Assembly (NCBI RefSeq): GCF_000400465.1
Contig: NW_008806287.1
Span: forward strand, 300,001 to 332,000
DNA: 32,000 nt
Source of the DNA: Wallemia ichthyophaga EXF-994
Taxonomy: Eukaryota; Fungi; Basidiomycota
Reading direction: 5' to 3'
How positions within the stretch are numbered: position 1 is the stretch's first letter; every line of letters starts with the position of its first letter. A program made the translations under genes and the position numbers. The notes below the pieces were generated by a model that was given only the letters and a program-made list of their open reading frames with translations, searched no databases and had not been told where the DNA came from. Positions 3,455 to 23,582 of this stretch are shown here, piece after piece.

Positions 3455-5099
3455 TCAAGCTATCGACTCACGCTTATTAAACTTAGCGACAAAGCCGTCT
3501 TTGGGGAAAATAGTGGCAATGACTTCAACATTGTGAGATTGAGGAGTAACAATGTGTTCCCAGTCCATAAGGACGCTGGCAGACCCAATGAGAGCGGTCA
3601 TATGCAAAACGGCGTATTCCTTCCCGAGGCAATGATGAGGACCATGTCCGAAAACGAGATAGTTAGCAGCAGCTTTTTCAGCATCGCTCGGATTACCATT
3701 AGCATCAGGAAGCCATCTTTCTGGCCTAAATGACTCAGGGTCGCCATACACTGCCGGATCATGAAGCGAGGGGTAGATACTAGGAATGAGCATAGTACCT
3801 TTAGGTACAGTGTAATCAGCGTTGATAGGGAAAGGTTTTTTAGTGAGATAAGGCACCATAATAACAGGAGGCTTGATACGAAGAGATTCCTTTATACAAG
3901 CGCGTGTATAAGTCATCTGGTCGATCATATCGAGAGTAGTTGGTGAATCTACATCGCCACCACGGACACGATATTGCTCTTCACGTACCCGACCCAGTAC
4001 CTCCGGATGATCAGCTAGTAATTGAAAGATGTAAACAACACCACTGGTCATGGCATCCTGAGAAGCGAATAGGAATGATAAGACAACCATAGCCATTTCG
4101 TTATCGGAGAATTCGCGCGCGCGTAACACTTTGCTTGAACCATCTGTATGAGCGTTGTTTTTAGCCTCGTGCATCGCCTTCGTCCAGTGGTCAAGCAAAC
4201 ACTCTGGCTCTGCATCATTGCTCATGCGCTCCTTAGATTGAGCGGACGCATGCTCAAACCATTTAACAGCCACTTTGCGTGCTTTTATCGCTTTGTATAC
4301 CTTAGTACCAGGCCAAGCGAAGGGGAAGTTGACCAGCTCGAGCGCGACGGTAATAAGCCAGTATTTGGCACTGATATCGTCTTGCGCATGCTGGGGAATG
4401 TATTCGCCACAAAAGACTTTTAATGAGGTTTCCATGTTGAGATCGCGCATGGACATCATGTAGCTCTTGGGAGTGGCATCACGCGTCCACTTGTCAAAGT
4501 ACTTGCGGTAGATGGACTCTTGAATGGGGAGATAGCTGCTTAGTGCGCGGCGGGTGAATAATACGTTGAGGCCCTTGCGGTAGTCGGAATGCACCTTGCC
4601 GTTGAGGAAGACCCAGTTGTTAGGATCGAGAACCTTTTTGGCACTGGCTACGAGACACGGCTCGGCGTAGGAAGCGCTGCTGAATATTTTGCGACTGTAC
4701 TCGTTCTTGGCAGCTTGGACGATGAAGCTAGAGAGTGTGGATGTTAGACGGGGGGCGATACAATGAACTAGATAAACCAGACTAACATATTGAAAACAGA
4801 GACTGCAGATAAATCACCCAGCTTCCATCCAGACATGTAGTTCTCCAGACTAGGATTTAAACTGTCGGCGAAACGACCAATAATGGGAATAGACCAACTG
4901 GGACCCTGTAAAGGAGGTTAGCGGATATATCAACAAATTAGCACTCAAAACACACGGGCAAATGACCCTTTTTGTACTTGTAAATGGCCTGCTCGAGGAT
5001 GAGCAGCGAGGCAGCAACGGCGAGAATGGCAGTAAGGAGAGGCTGGCTAGTGCGCTCAACGGGTTGAGCGTCGGTATAATAGCTTTGCGTTGAGTTCAT
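3455..5099 (-). CDS. ERG5: Sterol C-22 desaturase, cytochrome P450 CYP61
   Basis: FLFASQDA I-helix, ESLR, PERW and heme motif FGHGPHHCLG. N-terminal anchor LLTAILAVAASLLILEQ. Introns 4906-4955 and 4728-4786 restore GPSWSIPIIG...SVFNIFIV...NWVFLNGKVHSDYRKGLN. Confidence 0.95.
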
Positions 5100-15603: not shown

Positions 15604-17050
15604 ATGAGTCGCCCAGAAAACGTTGGAATTAAGGGAATAGAGATTTATTTCCCAAAGAGAGTTAGTTGAGGTGGTTCTGGTACTTCTCTCAGCTCACACA
15701 CCGCACAGTGCATCTCAGAAACTGATTTAGAGCAATTTGACGGCGTTTCTGCTGGAAAGTACACTATCGGATTCGGACAGCAATACATGGCTTGCTGCGA
15801 TGACAGAGAAGATATCAACTCTTTCGCCTTGTCCGCCGTCGATGGCCTTCTCAAGAAGTACAACGTCGATCCAAAATCTATTGGCAGATTGGAAGTTGGC
15901 ACTGAAACTGTCATCGATAAATCCAAATCTACAAAGACTGTCTTAATGGACTTGTTCAAGGATTCTGGCAACACTGACATTGAGGGTCAGTCAAACGTTT
16001 GCTTTCTTTACCATTTCTCATTTACCTACAGGTGTTGACACTAAGAATGCTTGTTACGGCGGTACCTCAGCCCTCTTTAACGCTGTCAATTGGGTTGAAT
16101 CTTCTAGCTGGGACGGCAGAGACGCTATCGTCGTAGCCGGTGACATTGCCATTTACGCTGAAGGTTCTGCTAGACCTGTCGGTGGTGCAGGCTGCGTTGC
16201 CATGCTCATTGGTCCAAACGCACCAATCGTTCTTGAGCCTACTCACGGTACATACATGACAAACGCATGGGACTTCTACAAGCCAGACCTCAACTCTGAA
16301 TACCCAGAAGTAGATGGCCCACTCACTATTGACTGCTACTTTGGATCTCTCGACAACTCGTACGACTCGTACCGCGAGAAATACTCCAAGCGCACCCAAA
16401 CCAACAAGCAAGACGTTAAGGGTGACAACTTTGACTTCATGGTCTTCCACTCTCCATACGGCAAACTTGTCCAAAAGGGTCATGCCAGACTCACCTACAA
16501 CGACTTTGTATCCAACCCCTCCCTGCCAAAGTTTGAGGGTATCGATCAAGCTATCGCTTCAGTACCAAAAGCAAAGACGTACTTTGACAAGGCAATCGAA
16601 AAGACATTCATGACTGCCGCTAAGGATGCCTACAGCAAGCAAGTTGAGCCTTCTTCAACTACCTGCAAGCGTCTCGGTAACATGTACACTGGTTCTCTCT
16701 ACGGTGGTCTCGCATCTCTCCTCTCCAACGTCAACTCGGATGACTTGCAAGGAAAGAGAGCGGGTATGTACTCTTACGGATCTGGATGTGCTGCATCCTT
16801 CTTTGCTGTCAAATTCGTCGGATCTACAAAGCAAATTGCTGATGCGGTCGATTTACACAAGCGTCTCGACTCGATGAAGGTTGTTCCTGTGACTGAATAC
16901 GTTTCTTCCCTCAAAACTCGTGAGGAGAATCACAACGCAAAGTCTTATGCTCCTAAAGGTCAAATTGAAAACATATGGGGTGGTGCTTACTACCTCGACA
17001 ACATTGACGAAAAATTCCGTCGTCACTACAAACAAGCTCCACTCGCATAG
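15604..17050 (+). CDS. ERG13: Hydroxymethylglutaryl-CoA synthase
   Basis: MSRPENVGIKGIEIYFP, LEVGTETVIDKSKS, DTKNACYGGT (catalytic Cys), FHSPYGKLVQK, GNMYTGSLY. Introns 15661-15708 and 15986-16031. Confidence 0.97.
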
Positions 17051-17254
17051 ATTGAGTGATCGTGTTTTGTTGAACCGCTGCAATGCCACACCCAATTGAT
17101 AGAAAAACCTTTGTTTAGATAACATTTGTATTAGCAGTATATTCCATTTCTTAGGATTAAAAGGTTGTGTTTGGTTTTTTTGGTTGCTCATACACGCTAC
17201 CTCACCTACAAAAATCACAATACGATCATGCAATACAACATAAATAAGACACTC

Positions 17255-19489
17255 TCACATACTTTCAAACAACAAATTAGCCGCCATTTCCGTATTTTTC
17301 TCACAAGCAAGATAGCATTGCTTGGCTTGTTCAAAGTCAAATCCACCAAATGAACAGAGCTGTGTGATGTTAGTTTTACTCCATTTACTCGCTAACCTTC
17401 ACTCACATTCTCAATTGCCTCTCTGTCTGAAGGTGAGACGTCGACTTCTCTTTGTTCTTGCTCTCTTTGCTCTCTTTCCTGTCTAGCCGTCTGTTCAGAA
17501 GCTGCAAGAACGTCATGAGGAATATCTTCAGCCTCATTTAAACTTTGTGCATTCGCAGCTGTAACGTGTTAAATGGGAATCAACCATATAACTTAACTCC
17601 CACCTTGTGTACTAGCCTGCTCACGAGCAATGGCCATAAGATTCAGCCAGCTGCTGCTCTTCAACAATTTCTCCAAATCTCTTTCATCCCTATTGATACC
17701 AACCTTCAATGCCAATCTAGATTCATCCGCACTGAACATTCCAGATGGCTCCAAGAAAGCAATCAGATGCCAATCATTGAGTATATCACAAAGCGCCTCC
17801 TTCTTTTCATTAGTGACACTTTCAAGGTCAACATCATCCGAATTATGGAAACCCAATCCAGTACTCTCAGAAACAACTGGCAAGAAAGTCGAGATAAGCT
17901 TGCTGACAGACTGATCCTGGAAACCTTGTCTGTTTTCTATTGGAAATACGCTGCTCTTAAACACCGGGTTGGACTGGTTAGGGAAACCGTGTGTGAGATT
18001 AACAAGCAGATATTCCACAGGGAAGCACGGTTTAGCGTTCTTTTTAACATCTATTCCGTACTCATTTTTGTAGCGGTAAAACACATCGGGAATGTACTTT
18101 CCCGGTTTAGACTCTTTCATACGCAGCGTTGATGGCTCGACGGATGGTTCGACGATATCTGCATCGATGAGTGCCATTCCTTGATCAGAGATTTGGAATG
18201 CAGATATATCAATACCGCCATTCTGCGTGCCACTGAGCACGCAAGTGATAAATCTTGAGTTGAATCTACCACTCTTGGATTGTGTTGTTTGTAACTTGTG
18301 TTGATTCTGTAAGTGTCCCGCGAAACACAACTCCAATGAAGATAAAAAGAAACTGTCTTTGTGGCGCTTGAATAGTGGTGACTGAGTGCCCGGTGGTTGG
18401 GAGAGATCGGAGTATATCATACCGAGTACCTCTAATCCAGCATTCTGCGCCAATTCAACGACCCTCTCTTGATCTTCCCATGGTAAGCCGAGAGTCATAC
18501 CGTCGACTTCACCTTCTTGTGGGATCTCATGCACCGCTTCGACGACGGCCTTAATACCCATAGGCACAGCTTCATATGGTGCATATCTACCGAGCAGAAT
18601 ACCAAATCTCTGCAAACCAGAAGCGCGCCAGAAGTTCAGCAATCCTTCAACCAAACCAGGAGAGGAAAATTCGACATGATCGAGCATTCTGTATTCCTGG
18701 ACTTGGAGAGTGATAGCGTTAGGAACCCACTGCTTAAATTTAAAGTCCAATTCTTCTAAAGGTGGTAGCTGCGCGACAGAGGAGGTTGGTGGATTACTAT
18801 CTTTGAGTTTACGAAGGTATGCGTGAAATGATAAGTGCTTTATGTTCTGCTGAGCTTGGTATTCTTTGTCGTAAGGCTGAGGAAAAGTGAGAGTGATAAA
18901 TGGAATACAATCAACGCACCTCGATTGGAAGTGTGTTTAGATTACCTTCCCTCGAAGAAGACGACGTCTGGCGAGGTATCTTACCAGACTGCCTAAACCA
19001 ATGCGCGTCGATTGGATGGTCTTTTACGAGTTGCCACGGTCTAGCGGGAAGGCTAGAAGTAGTACCAGAAGCAGTGCTAGAGGATTGCGCTGGCTCTGGC
19101 ACTTTTGCAGAGGAGGCGAAAAGAAGATCACCGTGCCTAGGAAGAGTGCTAATCAGCTAAATTCCTTGTAAATCCTATCAATCCACGCACTTTATACCCA
19201 AATCGGATAACTTCCTCTTTGAGAGTGACGACAGCTGAGTCTCACCACCCCTAGGCTCATTTGAGAGCGATAGCGTGTGCTTATCGAGTGTAGGTGCACT
19301 CTCTATAATCTACACTTTCCGTCAACGCGAATCCACGCCACCTGCGCTGCTACCCACTCTATCTCCCAGCAATTCGATCGAATCATCTCCACTCAAATCG
19401 AATCTGAATGTTCCTTCAGCTGAGCGTATTCTGACAATCTAAATGACGCCATTAGCGTGTCTATGTGTACTAGCACTCCCACCAACCAT
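17255..19489 (-). CDS. NPL4: Cdc48 cofactor Npl4 with atypical architecture (no zf-Npl4 zinc fingers; C-terminal UBA)
   Basis: UBL MIVRIRSAEGTFRF...LGIKHGDLLF; KHLSFHAYLRK; AITLQ..EYRMLDHVEF; QRFGILLGRY; GMIYSDL; FLSSLE; SRFITCV; FPVEYLLVNLTHGFP; FPIENR. Six GT-AG introns; first exon is ATG only. Confidence 0.93.
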
Positions 19490-19545
19490 TTCAACGTCAA
19501 TGTAAACCCTAAAGAGATACAACATTCATATATTTCTTAAAATTA

Positions 19546-21128
19546 TCACATTATCATACAGTTGACATCTTCTATCCCATTCTCCTCCATGTGCTCCTTC
19601 TGGGCTTCTTTGTCGTTCGCTTTCGCTTTCGCGCGGACTTCCTTTGGAAAATACAGCTCCATGAAACCAACGAGGGCTTGATCGAGATTATCTGAATGAC
19701 TGTCTGAGTAAGTGCTTATCTGACGATCGCCGACTCACTTCTATTCGCTGACATCACTACAGGTGCCCTACACAATGGGCAATCTGACTGGCCGCGCTTT
19801 TGCATCTTGACGAGGCATCTAACGCAGAATATATGAGTGCAGCTACATAATTTGTTAGCTTGTTTCAAACATGAATACACCTAACTCACTTTAACCTAAT
19901 TGGCTTTGTTTGTTTTGTTAGCAGCACCCTACCACAACCAATGCACCCACCTTAAACGCAATCTCTTGGCATATTAAACAATTGTAATCGTCTATAGACG
20001 GGATTATTGGTATCAATGTCTCCGTCAGCCTCGCAAGAAGTACTCTAGGCAAGCTGATAGTGTAGAATGTCCAACCGAAGTTAGAGTTCTTGGAACTAGT
20101 TGCAGACTGCAACGCGCTCCCTTCGACACCAGCGAAAGAGTAGAAAGAATCCGTAGGCAGTGCTGTCATTTTCATGTGTTTCTTGAGTATTTTCCGCGCT
20201 GCTTCAAGATTCGCAGTATAGAACTTTTTAATCTCGAGCAAAGCCATATTCAGTTCCAAGAACTGATCAAGAGCCTGCCGTGATCGCTTTGACTTCATAG
20301 TCCGACTATCACCTAGTCCACGCTTGACGACCTCAGCAGCGAATGCATTCAGACGTATCTCCGCACTCTCTACATCCCTTTCACCCCGACTAGACTCAGT
20401 TATACCTTCATATATTGCAGATTCCACCCAGAGCGTGAAAATCTCCCGCCACGCGTATAAATCATTCGTCTTCTTCTTGTGCAAACCGAATGTCGAATGA
20501 TTTACCGCACTCGGTCCTGTTACACCTGTTATGGCATTACATAGCGTCTCTACCTGCGTGGCGAACTTCTTCTTTTCAACCATTTGCAGCGCCTCGAGCT
20601 TATCGAATGCAGCTGTGAGTGCGCCCAAGAACTTTGCATCCGCGTTGAGGGGTATGTGAATTTCTTTGTTGGATGGATCTGTGCCATCTGTGAATATTTC
20701 TTCCATATTGTCCTGATGCTGCTTATCAAGGTCCTTGTTTGAGGTACTTGACGTACTCGCGGTGACGGCATCTAAACCGGAAGAGCCCTTCTGAAGGTTG
20801 TAGAGACTCAACCACTCCTCCCTGCTATCATTATCATTGAACTGTACAATAAGTCGAGGCTGTGGCTGATTCAATGGCCCGTCAAGGACATATTCGATGT
20901 GGGTATCTTCCGTTTTCCTCAAAAGCAAATCGAGCAACTTCGATTTATTCAATCCGATCATGTTAAGCTCCTCGACGACATCCGTTAGAAGCTTTTTAAG
21001 GTGCTTATACTCGATGCTGTTCTCCTGCCACTCTGTGGGGAAAGTTAGTGCGATGTGGCACGTGAAGTATAACACACACCCTCTGGGAATTCTTCATTTA
21101 GCTGCTCAAATTGTTTCCCGTATTTCAT
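19546..21128 (-). CDS. SPX-RING (C3HC4) E3 ubiquitin ligase, Pqr1/Spx1-like, ending in CAAX
   Basis: MKYGKQF...PEEWQENSIEYKHLKK (SPX). The RING CLIC..KPIRLNCTHIFCVRC...CPLC is assembled through a 14-nt microexon (19890-19903). Ends NCMIM*. Confidence 0.88.
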
Positions 21129-21337
21129 TGCTTGGATGCATACGATTCGCGTTTCACGTTGATATTTTTTGATAGCACTTAAGCAACCCCAGTTACACTA
21201 GCTTTACTCAGTTTGGTATGTGGTACAAGGGCTTGAAATGCTCGAGGAAATTATTCCATTCAGCGCACGTTGCTTAGGTTTGTCTTGGAAATTTTATACT
21301 TGAATTTTTTTGTAAAAATAGCGCGTAAATGCATATT

Positions 21338-23582
21338 CTACAACTCAATCCTATTATACTTGGCATCATGATTGTGCAATTTGCTCTGATTGATCTTTAT
21401 CCTCTTCTCATCCGCCTTAACAAAGACTTCAACCGACCACTCAAACCACACCTTCTTGTTATCAGTAAGACGCCAGAGATGTACATCCACCTCGCTATTC
21501 GTTGGTAGATATACGCCCGTGTTTATTGGAAAATATATTGGGAACCAACTTAACATTTCCTTATCATAACGCTCTGGATGTGTCGATAGCCACACATTCC
21601 CGTACAAATGTGCTTCAAAGTATCCTGCTAATCCATGCAGAACACCAGCATAAGGAATAGTGAATGTCAGATGGGCTGCTCTTGTGTTATGATAGTTTGT
21701 CATCGGATTCCCATTTCGATCCATCACAAACTCATACTTGGATGGGTGCTTATACGACCAACATTGCTGAACTGCCTTACGATTGCTTTCTTTATCCATT
21801 CCGCTGAGTATATTTACAGCCTGGAACATGACCACGTAAGGCATTTCAGCATTCTTAGCATCTCCCATGTGCATCACCTCATTATACAGCTTGGTTGACG
21901 ATAGTGGGGCTATGTATGACGTGTAGTAGGATGGTATTGACACTCCATATGGCTTCAAAAGCCTCATAGCACCATCTAAACATTCGGGAGAGAGTTCATT
22001 ATCACCAAAGCTACCAAGTAGCTCAGAGATGAGTATATCATTCTTCTGCTCGTCTTCCAGTTCTATAATACGCATATCGCCAAAAACCAACTCTACACTC
22101 GCGATTTTGCTCTCATTCCATTCATCCATTCTACCTTGCAATGTTACACAAGCATTTGGGTTTTTCTCTACGGCCATTATGTGTATCCTTCTACCTTCAG
22201 CTGCAGCTTCTACTGCGTTAATTGCTCCTTGCACTAATGGCCCTCGACCAGCACCAACGACTGCTATCCTTGTCAGTGAATTTGGTTCTTTATCGAGCAG
22301 TGCTAGGTATGTTGCTTGTTCGTATTTTTGATACTTGATAGGATCTTTTTCGAATATTTCATATGTCGAGCTATCCAAGTTGTCAAGAAGAGGCTGCAGC
22401 GGTGCTTGTAACCAATCCATATATCCACTTGCAAACTGCTCGACAGAAGTTGCACTGTCGTTTGAAAGCTTCTCCATGTAGCGTAGGTATTGCACATATG
22501 CTTTGCTGCCACCGGACTTGTGAATACCTTCGTAAGTCTCAGTGAGTACAATTGTCGGAAGTGTCTGTTTGTTGGAATGAGTTGAGTTAATAGAAATGAC
22601 AAAGAAAAAAATACCCACTTTGATCTGCTCCTTGATAAACTCCTGACAAGACTTGGAGAGAACAGGATATCCTTTTGCGTTCCCTACAAAGGCATTTGCT
22701 GGTATAATAATCTGCCGAGTTGGTTCACTCGACCATCTCTTGAGTGCACAGGGCGGTGGCAGAGGCTGGCCAAGATCCAACGCCAGGCCAAGCCTAGGCG
22801 AGTAGTCACAGAGTGTACGTATAGCATCCCAGACTTCCCACGTCGATGAAGGATCGCCCTTGAACTCAGATAACGCCGGGGATACGCCGGATTGCTCAAG
22901 TTCAGCAGGATCAGACACAGGTATCATGACAGAAAGCTGCAAATACGACGTGCTATCTAATGCTGCCATAACAGACCGAGCATAGTCTGCGACATGTTTC
23001 CGATTCTTCGGTGCTGGTAATATGAGCGTGTGTATACTAAGATAAGAAGCGTACGCGACTTCCTGCTTCAGAGCCATCTCCGAATCAAACCTGATTCCCT
23101 CATCTGGAGAATCGAGCTCAAGCCAATCTGACGCAAAGGCAATTATCGACTCGCATTCGTCTGTGCGCGTGAGTGATTAGAGTAATGGAATAAGCGTATT
23201 TAACGCACCAAGCTTAGAAACATTTACTTCATTCTTATCGTAAACCCTTGTTAGCCTCCAGACTTCTGCCTCCTTGGCTGTCTGTCGATCTTGTACAACG
23301 TTCTCTGTCGTCAAGGCCAATAAGAGCAGGCAATCAACAAAATCAAAACGCACCAGACTTTCCAGCTATATAGCTCGCCCTAGCTCTGCCCTTATTGACA
23401 TCGTTTTCGTTTGAAACACAGTAGCGCTGCCAACGAGTTTTCCAGGTGGGTTTGGTGAACGGGAGAGTGATTGCGTCGTAATCAAGATCGAATGCATCAT
23501 TCACGTGATCCAAAATTGTCGGATTGCTATCGAGCAAGTCCTGATCGATGTGGTTCGCTATCGGCACACGATTCCCGGTCAT
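21338..23582 (-). CDS. PRMT5: Protein arginine N-methyltransferase 5 (Skb1/Hsl7)
   Basis: DWLELDSPDEGIRFDSE, LQAPLQPLLDNLDSSTYEIFEKDPIKY, VGAGRGPLV, SELLGSFGDNELSPECLDG, SWFPIYFP. Three introns; the start at MTGNRVP is the least certain part. Confidence 0.93.

What the first reader, a model, noticed from the sequence alone, without database searches (positions are those of the whole stretch)
17255..17436. Npl4 fused to a Rad23-type UBA domain
Seen: two extra spliced exons (introns 17559-17603, 17360-17406) extend Npl4 with a linker and SPSDREAIENLCSFGGFDFEQAKQCYLACEKNTEMAANLLFESM*. Known: this resembles the Rad23/HHR23 second UBA (EAIERL...GF...QAYFACEKNE.LAANFL). Metazoan Npl4 has an NZF ubiquitin-binding finger at this position and yeast Npl4 has none. 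Inference: a zinc-free ubiquitin-binding module was recruited, paralleling loss of the zf-Npl4 fingers, giving a fully zinc-free Npl4.
Basis: partly seen in the sequence, partly recalled or inferred. Interest (0 to 1): 0.7.

Follow-up and report, generated by a model that had tools for sequence, protein, structure and literature searches.

The report
Npl4 with UBA replacing its zinc finger
In the salt-loving fungus Wallemia, the Cdc48/p97 cofactor Npl4 has swapped its usual C-terminal ubiquitin-binding zinc finger for a Rad23-type UBA domain and has also lost the ligands of its two internal zinc fingers, which gives a natural test of what those fingers are needed for.

Summary
The window is Wallemia ichthyophaga. 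On the minus strand lies a 7-exon NPL4 gene of 649 aa. Its last two exons, behind the introns 17603-17559 and 17406-17360, add a charged linker and a C-terminal UBA.

The tail passes Pfam UBA on its own (26.4 bits, cutoff 22.4). Its best PDB matches are the second UBA of Rad23 (yeast Rad23, E 7.8e-8), and it is predicted to fold as a three-helix bundle.

The tail is conserved in W. hederae and in a more distant Wallemia lineage: 13 synonymous and 0 non-synonymous changes against L002, and 18 and 3 against L001. It is the best conserved part of the protein.

Of 117 other basidiomycete Npl4s, 115 end in an NZF zinc finger and none has a UBA, so this is a replacement. All eight Cys/His ligand positions of the two zf-NPL4 fingers are also substituted or deleted.

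An exhaustive scan of 1.84 billion representatives found no other Npl4+UBA. Zinc-finger-less Npl4 has precedents in plants and Leishmania.

Still untested: transcripts, ubiquitin binding, zinc content, and descent from Wallemia's own Rad23. Verdict: a new variant of a known kind, of moderate interest.

The parts
17255..19489 (-). Whole NPL4 gene of Wallemia ichthyophaga. It has 7 exons (19489-19487, 19438-19358, 19309-19191, 19136-18920, 18876-17604, 17558-17407, 17359-17255) and encodes 649 aa. A deposited model uses an in-frame ATG at 19524 instead, which adds 12 aa.
   Evidence: Model built. It is identical to the Npl4 part of the deposited models P0121, P0123 and P0124. Pfam finds UN_NPL4, zf-NPL4, NPL4 and UBA. 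PDB Npl4 chains match at E 3.7e-113.
17559..17603 (-). Penultimate intron, 45 nt, phase 1. It holds the unspliced stop at 17595-17593. It is an old intron that separates the Npl4 core from the exon carrying the ubiquitin-binding module.
   Evidence: A phase-1 intron sits at the homologous position in Obba rivulosa (L005) and Naganishia albida (L006). The intron is absent in the Wallemia lineage of L001, where the linker is read straight through.
17440..17556 (-). Tail linker, residues 566-604. It contains the DIPxDV motif (17526-17506) shared with NZF-bearing orthologues, then a charged REQREQEQRE stretch.
   Evidence: Against L002 it has the same length (152 nt exon) and 13 synonymous and 8 non-synonymous codon changes.
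17407..17445 (-). First part of the UBA (VDVSPSDREAIEN): the N-cap and most of helix 1, at the end of exon 6.
   Evidence: The Pfam UBA match starts at residue 609. The segment aligns with the VxVTPxExxAIxRL segment of Rad23 UBA2.
17360..17406 (-). Last intron, 47 nt, phase 0, with a canonical CTAAC branch site. It splits helix 1 of the UBA.
   Evidence: An intron sits at the same position in L002 (46 nt) and L001 (56 nt), only 55-72% identical and with indels.
17255..17359 (-). Last exon: the rest of the UBA (LCSFGGFDFEQAKQCYLACEKNTEMAANLLFESM) and the TGA stop at 17257-17255.
   Evidence: Against L002 it shows 13 synonymous and 0 non-synonymous changes, and against L001 18 and 3. The tail-only AlphaFold model is a three-helix bundle with pLDDT 86.2. 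The top Foldseek hit is Rad23 UBA2, 2qsf_X.
18874..18970 (-). Remnant of zf-NPL4 finger 1 (QTSSSSREGNLNTLPIEP). The C-x-H...C-x2-C ligands are replaced or deleted. An intron (18919-18877) lies inside this span.
   Evidence: Column analysis against 116 basidiomycete Npl4s. The replacement sequence SSSREGNLNTLPIEPYDKEY is conserved in three Wallemia lineages.
18721..18741 (-). Site of the finger-2 deletion (KFKQWVP). About 17 alignment columns that carry C...H...C-x2-C in all 117 other orthologues are missing.
   Evidence: The same deletion is present in P0002, P0003, P0141 and L001.

Best explanation
The last two exons of the Wallemia NPL4 gene are translated. They give the Cdc48/p97 cofactor Npl4 a flexible charged linker and a C-terminal UBA domain of the Rad23 second-UBA type. 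In the ancestor of the genus, this UBA took the place of the NZF zinc finger that other basidiomycete and metazoan Npl4 proteins carry on the same 3' exon.

By analogy with the NZF, the UBA most likely serves as the tethered, higher-affinity ubiquitin-chain receptor of the Ufd1-Npl4 adaptor. In human NPL4 the NZF is the highest-affinity ubiquitin site but is dispensable for unfolding itself. The UBA would hold K48-linked chains near the Npl4 tower and groove, so that Cdc48 can start unfolding.

The same protein has also lost the metal ligands of both internal zf-NPL4 fingers, so it probably binds no zinc at all. It must then sit on Cdc48 through its retained UBX-like domain, through Ufd1, and through a remodelled but strongly conserved former finger region.

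What is shown here: the gene structure, the domain identity, the replacement, the ligand loss and purifying selection. What is inferred: translation of the tail, ubiquitin binding, absence of zinc, and the mode of docking.
For: Gene model and splice sites.

UBA identity: Pfam 26.4 bits for the tail alone and 24.6-29.9 bits in the other Wallemia lineages. PDB phmmer E 7.8e-8 to yeast Rad23 UBA2, then hHR23A/B UBA2. The tail prefers UBA2 over UBA1 in 48 of 53 Rad23-type proteins. The positions that are invariant across the aligned UBA2s, which include the loop-1 Gly and helix-3 N48 and L50, are shared by the Wallemia tail. The tail-only model is a three-helix bundle with pLDDT 86.2, and its best fold match is Rad23 UBA2 at TM 0.74 and rmsd 1.6 A.

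The tail is coding and functional. The UBA exon shows 13 synonymous and 0 non-synonymous changes against L002, and 18 and 3 against L001, while the introns are 55-72% identical with indels. L001 lacks the penultimate intron, so there the linker is part of the main ORF. The UBA is the most conserved region of the protein, 93% and 84% identical against 87% and 63% for the MPN/CTD core. All deposited W. ichthyophaga models examined carry an identical tail, while a few differ at core positions 173, 479, 481 or 482.

Replacement of the NZF: 115 of 117 other basidiomycete Npl4s have an NZF and none has a UBA2 signature. The DIPxDV linker motif is retained. A phase-1 intron in front of the module exon is shared with Obba and Naganishia.

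Zinc ligand loss. The zf-NPL4 score is halved, 106 bits against 214.

Role of the NZF and of ZF1/ZF2: PMC9377798 and PMC7785736.
Against: No transcript evidence was available. The deposited models come from ab initio prediction with GeneMark-ES (PMC3849046), so they are not independent proof of splicing. Intron retention is common in this fungus, so a UBA-less isoform that ends at 17593 may coexist.

Within the whole W. ichthyophaga protein the UBA scores 21.2 bits, just below the Pfam cutoff of 22.4.

The tail has a one-residue insertion in loop 1 (SFGGF against LGF) next to the conserved Gly-Phe. From general knowledge, that loop belongs to the usual ubiquitin-contact surface of UBA domains, so the insertion could change binding.

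Foldseek E-values are weak (best 1.4e-2) because the domain is tiny. The tail model was also built on an alignment of Rad23 UBA2s, so it leans towards that fold.

Ubiquitin binding, zinc content and Cdc48 docking were not measured. A second, canonical Npl4 paralogue in Wallemia was not formally excluded.
Confidence: 0.7

Rival explanations
1. The UBA tail is made, but its main job is not to capture substrate chains. One option is that it protects Npl4 in cis from being unfolded or degraded, as is reported for the C-terminal UBA of Rad23 (this is from my own knowledge of the Rad23 literature and was not checked here). Another is that it folds back on a ubiquitin-like surface, such as Npl4's own UBX-like domain or a partner's UBL/UBX, and so regulates assembly on Cdc48.
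For: The domain is of the Rad23 UBA2 type in particular, not a generic UBA. UBA-UBL complexes appear among the fold matches, for example Dsk2 UBA-UBL, 2bwe. Npl4 keeps a confidently modelled N-terminal UBX-like domain. Conservation is very high even relative to the core, which would fit a specific partner interface.
Against: The UBA sits exactly where other Npl4s have a ubiquitin-binding NZF, behind the same linker motif. Like-for-like replacement of function is therefore the simplest reading. No evidence for an intramolecular contact was obtained, and the full-length model is unreliable in the tail.
Confidence: 0.15
2. The tail is not part of the mature protein. Transcripts stop or stay unspliced, so Npl4 ends at ...STQGGS (17593), and the UBA-like exon is a relic or belongs to another transcript.
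For: An in-frame stop lies 9 nt into the penultimate intron. All public models are ab initio predictions, and intron retention is the main form of alternative splicing in this species. ORF-style gene calls on Logan and ENA contigs end there or inside the last intron (P0002, P0003, P0128).
Against: There are 13 synonymous and 0 non-synonymous changes in the UBA exon between two species, and 18 and 3 against a lineage only 61% identical overall. GT..AG and the branch site are conserved, while the intron bodies diverge and change length. In L001 the penultimate intron is missing, so the linker and the first UBA helix are already in the main ORF. The UBA is split by the last intron, so it cannot be a separate gene. 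It is the most conserved segment of the protein.
Confidence: 0.04
3. The NZF-to-UBA swap and the loss of the two internal fingers are unrelated events that happen to share a lineage. In that case no 'zinc-free' design or selective cause links them.
For: Npl4 fingers have been lost independently in plants and Leishmania without any gain of a UBA. Ascomycete Npl4 lacks the NZF but keeps ZF1 and ZF2. So the two features vary independently across eukaryotes.
Against: In all Wallemia lineages sampled the three zinc sites are gone together, and both remodelled regions are under strong constraint. No intermediate lineage was available to order the events.
Confidence: 0.55

Closest known systems
Npl4/NPLOC4 of Basidiomycota and Metazoa (UBXL, zf-NPL4 with ZF1 and ZF2, MPN, CTD, C-terminal NZF)
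   Same: It is the orthologue, 42-48% identical to other basidiomycete Npl4s. It has the same UBX-like domain, MPN/CTD core and DIPxDV linker, and the same phase-1 intron in front of the exon for the C-terminal ubiquitin-binding module.
   Different: The C-terminal NZF is replaced by a UBA. All eight Cys/His ligand positions of ZF1 and ZF2 are substituted or deleted.
Second (C-terminal) UBA domain of Rad23/hHR23A/B
   Same: It is the best match by sequence and by fold, 46-59% identical. The tail shares the V-x-V-(T/S)-P-x-(E/D)-x-x-A-I lead-in, the ACEKN..AAN(L/F)L signature and the position at the very C-terminus.
   Different: It is attached to Npl4, not to a UBL-UBA1-XPCB scaffold. It has one extra residue in loop 1 (FGGF). 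Whether it descends from Wallemia's own RAD23 gene was not tested.
Saccharomyces and Chaetomium Npl4 (structures 6oa9, 6chs, 6cdd)
   Same: They share the same core at E 1e-102 to 4e-113 and have no NZF.
   Different: They keep both zinc fingers, which anchor Npl4 on the D1 ring of Cdc48 (PMC7785736), and they have no C-terminal ubiquitin-binding module.
Zinc-finger-less NPL4 of plants (Arabidopsis, Marchantia) and Leishmania
   Same: These are Npl4 orthologues that lack the ZnF motifs and are proposed to contact CDC48 or VCP in other ways (PMC12902296; PMC7403338).
   Different: These are independent losses in distant lineages. Neither paper describes a UBA on Npl4. Leishmania also lacks the UBX-like domain, which Wallemia keeps.
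UBA-UBX cofactors of p97 (FAF1, UBXN7, p47/Shp1)
   Same: They use the same working principle: a UBA that binds ubiquitin chains is tethered to a module that docks on p97/Cdc48. They are reported to help Ufd1-Npl4 engage substrates (PMC9377798 and PMC9633789).
   Different: In those proteins the UBA sits on a separate cofactor. In Wallemia it is built into Npl4 itself.

Membership tests
UBA domain (Pfam PF00627) | Profile score at or above the curated cutoff of 22.4 bits | tested here: met
   The tail alone scores 26.4 bits. The L001 and W. hederae tails score 29.0 and 29.9 bits, and the whole W. hederae protein scores 24.6 bits. Caveat: the whole W. ichthyophaga protein scores 21.2 bits, just below the cutoff.
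UBA domain (Pfam PF00627) | Compact three-helix bundle of about 40 residues | tested here: met
   The AlphaFold2 tail model has helices at 12-25, 29-38 and 43-53 and a mean pLDDT of 86.2. Nearly all of the top 50 Foldseek PDB matches are UBA domains. This is a prediction only, and its input alignment consisted of Rad23 UBA2s.
UBA domain (Pfam PF00627) | Conserved loop-1 Gly-Phe/Tyr and helix-3 hydrophobic positions (the usual ubiquitin-contact surface, from general knowledge) | tested here: met
   G26 (followed by F27), Y36, N48 and L50 align with the invariant columns of 18 Rad23 UBA2s. There is one extra residue in the loop (FGGF).
UBA domain (Pfam PF00627) | Binds ubiquitin or ubiquitin chains | not testable with these tools
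   This needs a pull-down, ITC or NMR with recombinant protein.
Rad23-type second UBA (UBA2) | Closer to the C-terminal than to the internal UBA of Rad23 proteins | tested here: met
   The C-terminal UBA scores higher in 48 of 53 Rad23-type proteins, by 21.8 bits on average. All significant PDB sequence hits are Rad23 UBA2.
Rad23-type second UBA (UBA2) | Descent from the organism's own RAD23 gene (nearest neighbour in a tree, shared intron position) | not tested
   The native Wallemia Rad23 could not be retrieved.
Npl4 (PF11543 UN_NPL4, PF05020 zf-NPL4, PF05021 NPL4) | N-terminal UBX-like domain and MPN/CTD core | tested here: met
   UN_NPL4 scores E 3.1e-8 and NPL4 scores E 1e-101. PDB Npl4 chains match at E up to 3.7e-113. 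The core is modelled mostly at pLDDT 80-95.
Npl4 (PF11543 UN_NPL4, PF05020 zf-NPL4, PF05021 NPL4) | Two zinc fingers in the zf-NPL4 region, each with four conserved Cys/His positions | tested here: not met
   The region still matches the profile at E 2.6e-30, but all eight conserved Cys/His positions are substituted or deleted. This feature is not universal in the family, since plants and Leishmania lack it.
Npl4 (PF11543 UN_NPL4, PF05020 zf-NPL4, PF05021 NPL4) | C-terminal NZF, the basidiomycete and metazoan form | tested here: not met
   There is no CxxC...CxxC in the tail, whereas 115 of 117 other basidiomycete orthologues have it.
Npl4 (PF11543 UN_NPL4, PF05020 zf-NPL4, PF05021 NPL4) | Forms the Ufd1-Npl4 heterodimer and binds Cdc48 | not testable with these tools
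   This needs co-purification or reconstitution. Wallemia Ufd1 and Cdc48 were not examined.

The most novel reading that the evidence does not exclude
Wallemia has rebuilt the Cdc48-Ufd1-Npl4 adaptor to work without any zinc. Under this reading, loss of the ZF1 and ZF2 anchors and the swap of NZF for a UBA are linked adaptations, for example to metal stress or low water activity in hypersaline and xeric habitats. Such a complex would dock on Cdc48 in a new way, and it would be naturally insensitive to copper or dithiocarbamate agents, which are reported to inactivate human NPL4 through its zinc fingers.
Probability: 0.15. Interest if true: 0.75.

Novelty: new variant of a known kind. Interest (0 to 1): 0.55.

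Why it matters
In yeast and human complexes, the zinc fingers of Npl4 anchor it on the D1 ring of Cdc48/p97. Published work describes them as needed for unfolding and as the point where copper released from a disulfiram metabolite acts (PMC7785736). The NZF is the highest-affinity ubiquitin site of human NPL4 (PMC9377798).

A fungal Npl4 that has lost all three zinc sites is therefore useful. It stays under strong purifying selection and carries a non-homologous ubiquitin-binding domain in place of the NZF. That makes it a natural experiment on which functions truly need the fingers, and on whether a UBA can stand in for an NZF. It also offers a possible zinc-independent scaffold for biochemical comparison.

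The case is a clean example of one ubiquitin-binding module displacing another on a conserved 3' exon. It also shows that the common statement that fungal Npl4 lacks an NZF holds for the ascomycete models only. Nearly all basidiomycete orthologues sampled here have one.

Tried and rejected
1. Searching the big protein index with the 48-aa tail alone returned nothing, because the word index needs three shared 5-mers. That cost one search. I used the exhaustive HMMER scan instead.

2. P0148 ends in ...AANLLFDSM* like the Npl4 tail, so I suspected it was Wallemia's own Rad23. Its relatives are unnamed protist or stramenopile-type Rad23s, so I rejected that idea.

3. The full-length AlphaFold model is uninformative for the tail. 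It gives long helices at pLDDT 34-80, because the alignment rows there are misaligned NZF sequences. I used a tail-only job instead.

4. The locus of the closest non-Wallemia orthologue, P0004, has no introns, so it says nothing about ancestral intron positions. I used Obba and Naganishia instead.

5. Literature searches for Wallemia with Npl4, and for an Npl4 bearing a UBA, found nothing.

6. Technical slips: mafft --auto timed out, and my first L001 gene model was off by one base. Both were corrected.

7. I considered that the UBA exon might be a separate small gene. I rejected this because the last intron splits helix 1, and in L001 the linker is continuous with the Npl4 ORF.
Full report
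**What is at the site**

The window is a fungal chromosome segment with short GT..AG introns and 45.7% G+C. A 649-aa protein assembled from seven minus-strand exons (19489-19487, 19438-19358, 19309-19191, 19136-18920, 18876-17604, 17558-17407, 17359-17255) is 100% identical over its full length to deposited Wallemia ichthyophaga proteins. It is identical to the Npl4 part of the models P0121, P0123 and P0124.

Pfam finds four domains: UN_NPL4 (1-74), zf-NPL4 (105-227, E 2.6e-30), NPL4 (230-557, E 1e-101) and UBA (609-645). PDB Npl4 chains from Chaetomium, yeast and human match at E 3.7e-113 to 6e-59.

**Is the tail a UBA, and of which kind?**

On its own, the last 59 aa scores 26.4 bits against Pfam UBA, where the cutoff is 22.4. 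Within the whole protein it scores 21.2 bits, just under the cutoff. The tails of two other Wallemia lineages score 29.0 and 29.9 bits, and the whole W. hederae protein scores 24.6 bits.

A phmmer search of PDB returns only second UBA domains of Rad23 proteins at significant E-values: yeast Rad23 at 7.8e-8, then hHR23A and hHR23B. The alignment extends into the VxV(T/S)PxExxAI lead-in that precedes helix 1.

An exhaustive HMMER scan of 1.84 billion representative proteins used the last 144 aa as query and gave 110 hits at E up to 1e-3. The top hit is a synthetic four-fold hHR23A-UBA2 construct. Nine of the remaining hits carry an Npl4 core, and almost all the others match through a UBA at or near their C-terminus. 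Among Rad23-type proteins with two detectable UBAs, the tail scores higher against the C-terminal one in 48 of 53, by 21.8 bits on average.

The positions that are invariant across the aligned UBA2s, which include the loop-1 Gly and helix-3 N48 and L50, are shared by the Wallemia tail. The tail has one extra residue in the loop.

A tail-only AlphaFold2 model is a three-helix bundle with mean pLDDT 86.2. Its best Foldseek match in PDB is yeast Rad23 UBA2 (2qsf_X, TM 0.74, rmsd 1.6 A, 49% identity), and nearly all top matches are UBA domains. Foldseek E-values are weak for so small a domain, and the model was built on Rad23 UBA2 rows, so I count this as supporting evidence only.

**Is the tail really coding?**

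I had no transcript data. The deposited models come from ab initio prediction (PMC3849046), so they are not independent evidence. The comparative evidence is strong.

- In L002, a syntenic PRMT5-SPX-Npl4-HMGCS contig about 89% identical in the protein, the UBA exon differs at 13 codons, all synonymous.
- In L001, a Wallemia lineage only 61% identical overall, the exon shows 18 synonymous and 3 non-synonymous differences.
- The two introns are only 55-72% identical and change length: 45 against 48 nt for the penultimate intron, and 47, 46 and 56 nt for the last one.
- L001 has no penultimate intron at all, so its linker and the first UBA helix are already in the main ORF.
- Region by region, the UBA is the best conserved part of the protein. 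It is 93% identical to W. hederae and 84% to L001, against 87% and 63% for the MPN/CTD core.
- All deposited W. ichthyophaga models examined have an identical tail, while a few differ at core positions 173, 479, 481 or 482.

**What did the UBA replace?**

Of the 117 non-Wallemia proteins among the 120 best hits (nearly all from basidiomycetes), 115 end in an NZF (CPHCTFEN...DCEVCGLPL). The other two are a truncated model and an aberrant model. None has a Rad23-UBA2 signature.

The Wallemia linker keeps the DIPxDV motif that precedes the NZF in those orthologues. The penultimate Wallemia intron has phase-1 counterparts at the homologous position in Obba rivulosa and Naganishia albida, and there the last exon encodes the linker plus the NZF.

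So the ubiquitin-binding module has long sat on its own 3' exon, and in the Wallemia ancestor its NZF part was exchanged for a UBA. The starting point was an NZF-bearing Npl4, not a yeast-like bare one.

In the exhaustive scan, the nine hits that contain an Npl4 core matched only the Npl4 part of the query and never the UBA. I therefore found no second Npl4+UBA fusion. One caveat applies: clustering at 50% identity can hide such proteins behind a representative that lacks the domain.

**The zinc fingers**

In an alignment with 116 other basidiomycete Npl4s, finger 1 has the conserved positions C, H, C and C (100, 84, 100 and 100% conserved). In Wallemia these are R130, G132 and two gaps. Finger 2 has C, H, C and C, all 100% conserved, and these lie in a deletion of about 17 columns.

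The finger-2 motif is found in all 117 other orthologues and not here. The protein has only seven cysteines, none in the former finger region. The same state is seen in W. hederae and in L001. The replacement sequence (SSSREGNLNTLPIEPYDKEY ... FKQWVP) is highly conserved across them, at 89% and 77% regional identity. The zf-NPL4 profile score is halved relative to Obba, 106 bits against 214.

With the NZF gone as well, no recognisable zinc site remains. That the protein is metal-free is an inference from sequence.

**How it most likely works**

Published work says that ZF1 and ZF2 bind the D1 ring and N domains of p97/Cdc48 and are important for unfolding (PMC7785736). It also says that the NZF is the highest-affinity ubiquitin site of human NPL4 but is dispensable for the unfolding step itself (PMC9377798).

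The simplest reading is like-for-like replacement. The UBA, on a flexible charged linker, captures ubiquitin chains and raises their local concentration at the Npl4 tower and groove. Rad23 UBA2 is known as a K48-chain binder (my own knowledge, not checked here).

Docking on Cdc48 would then rely on the retained UBX-like domain, on Ufd1, and on the remodelled but constrained former finger region. There are precedents for finger-less NPL4 in plants (PMC12902296) and in Leishmania (PMC7403338).

The rivals are:

1. The UBA acts mainly as a protective or regulatory element rather than as a chain receptor.
2. The tail is not expressed. This is now unlikely.
3. The UBA swap and the finger losses are unrelated events.

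**Novelty**

The protein is in public databases under automatic names, often wrongly fused to the upstream gene. I found no paper that mentions Wallemia together with Npl4, and none that describes a UBA on Npl4.

It is a new variant of a known kind. The cofactor, the domain type and the loss of fingers are each known. The combination is not, and neither is the NZF-to-UBA displacement in a fungus.

**Limits**

I have no RNA evidence, no binding or metal data and no native Rad23 for comparison. A canonical paralogue in Wallemia has not been formally excluded. None appeared among the 120 best hits, and the genome is small, at 4884 predicted genes.

Noticed in passing
window 19546-19438 (between the SPX/RING gene ending at 19546 and Npl4 exon 2): Most deposited W. 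ichthyophaga models (1106-1125 aa, including the reference XP_009269154.1) fuse the upstream SPX-RING gene to Npl4 by splicing around the stop codon (...GIEDVN|WFTLTLKWL|IVRIRS). In one strain's annotation the two genes are separate (464 aa and 661 aa). The fusion looks like an ab initio annotation artefact.
   Followed up: partly
window 19524-19487: By homology the Npl4 start is the ATG at 19489-19487 (compare MLIRFRS in yeast). That makes exon 1 a bare start codon followed at once by a 48-nt intron. An in-frame ATG at 19524 would add MLYLFRVYIDVE, and model P0124 uses it. Which start is used is unknown.
   Followed up: partly
L001 3300-3500 compared with window 17559-17603: The penultimate Npl4 intron is present in W. 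ichthyophaga, in the W. hederae-like L002, and in Obba and Naganishia. It is absent in the AT-rich Wallemia lineage of L001, which points to an intron loss within the genus.
   Followed up: partly
window 17344-17333 (SFGG of SFGGF, residues 618-622): All Wallemia Npl4 UBAs have one extra residue in loop 1 (FGGF where Rad23 UBA2 has LGF), next to the conserved Gly-Phe. From general knowledge that loop is part of the usual ubiquitin-contact surface. The effect on binding or linkage preference is unknown.
   Followed up: no
window 15787-23077 and L002 1-7211: The gene order PRMT5, SPX/RING protein, Npl4, then HMG-CoA synthase (convergent, with only about 205 bp between the two stop codons) is conserved between the window and the W. 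hederae-like contig L002.
   Followed up: partly
one search hit list (P0004-P0120): [quoted passage not shown] That holds for the ascomycete models only. Of the 117 non-Wallemia, mostly basidiomycete, Npl4 proteins sampled, 115 carry a C-terminal NZF.
   Followed up: yes
hit P0142: The best hit in the metagenome-derived representative library is a His-tagged synthetic protein made of four tandem hHR23A UBA2 copies, a ubiquitin-trap type construct. Laboratory constructs are evidently present in that collection.
   Followed up: no
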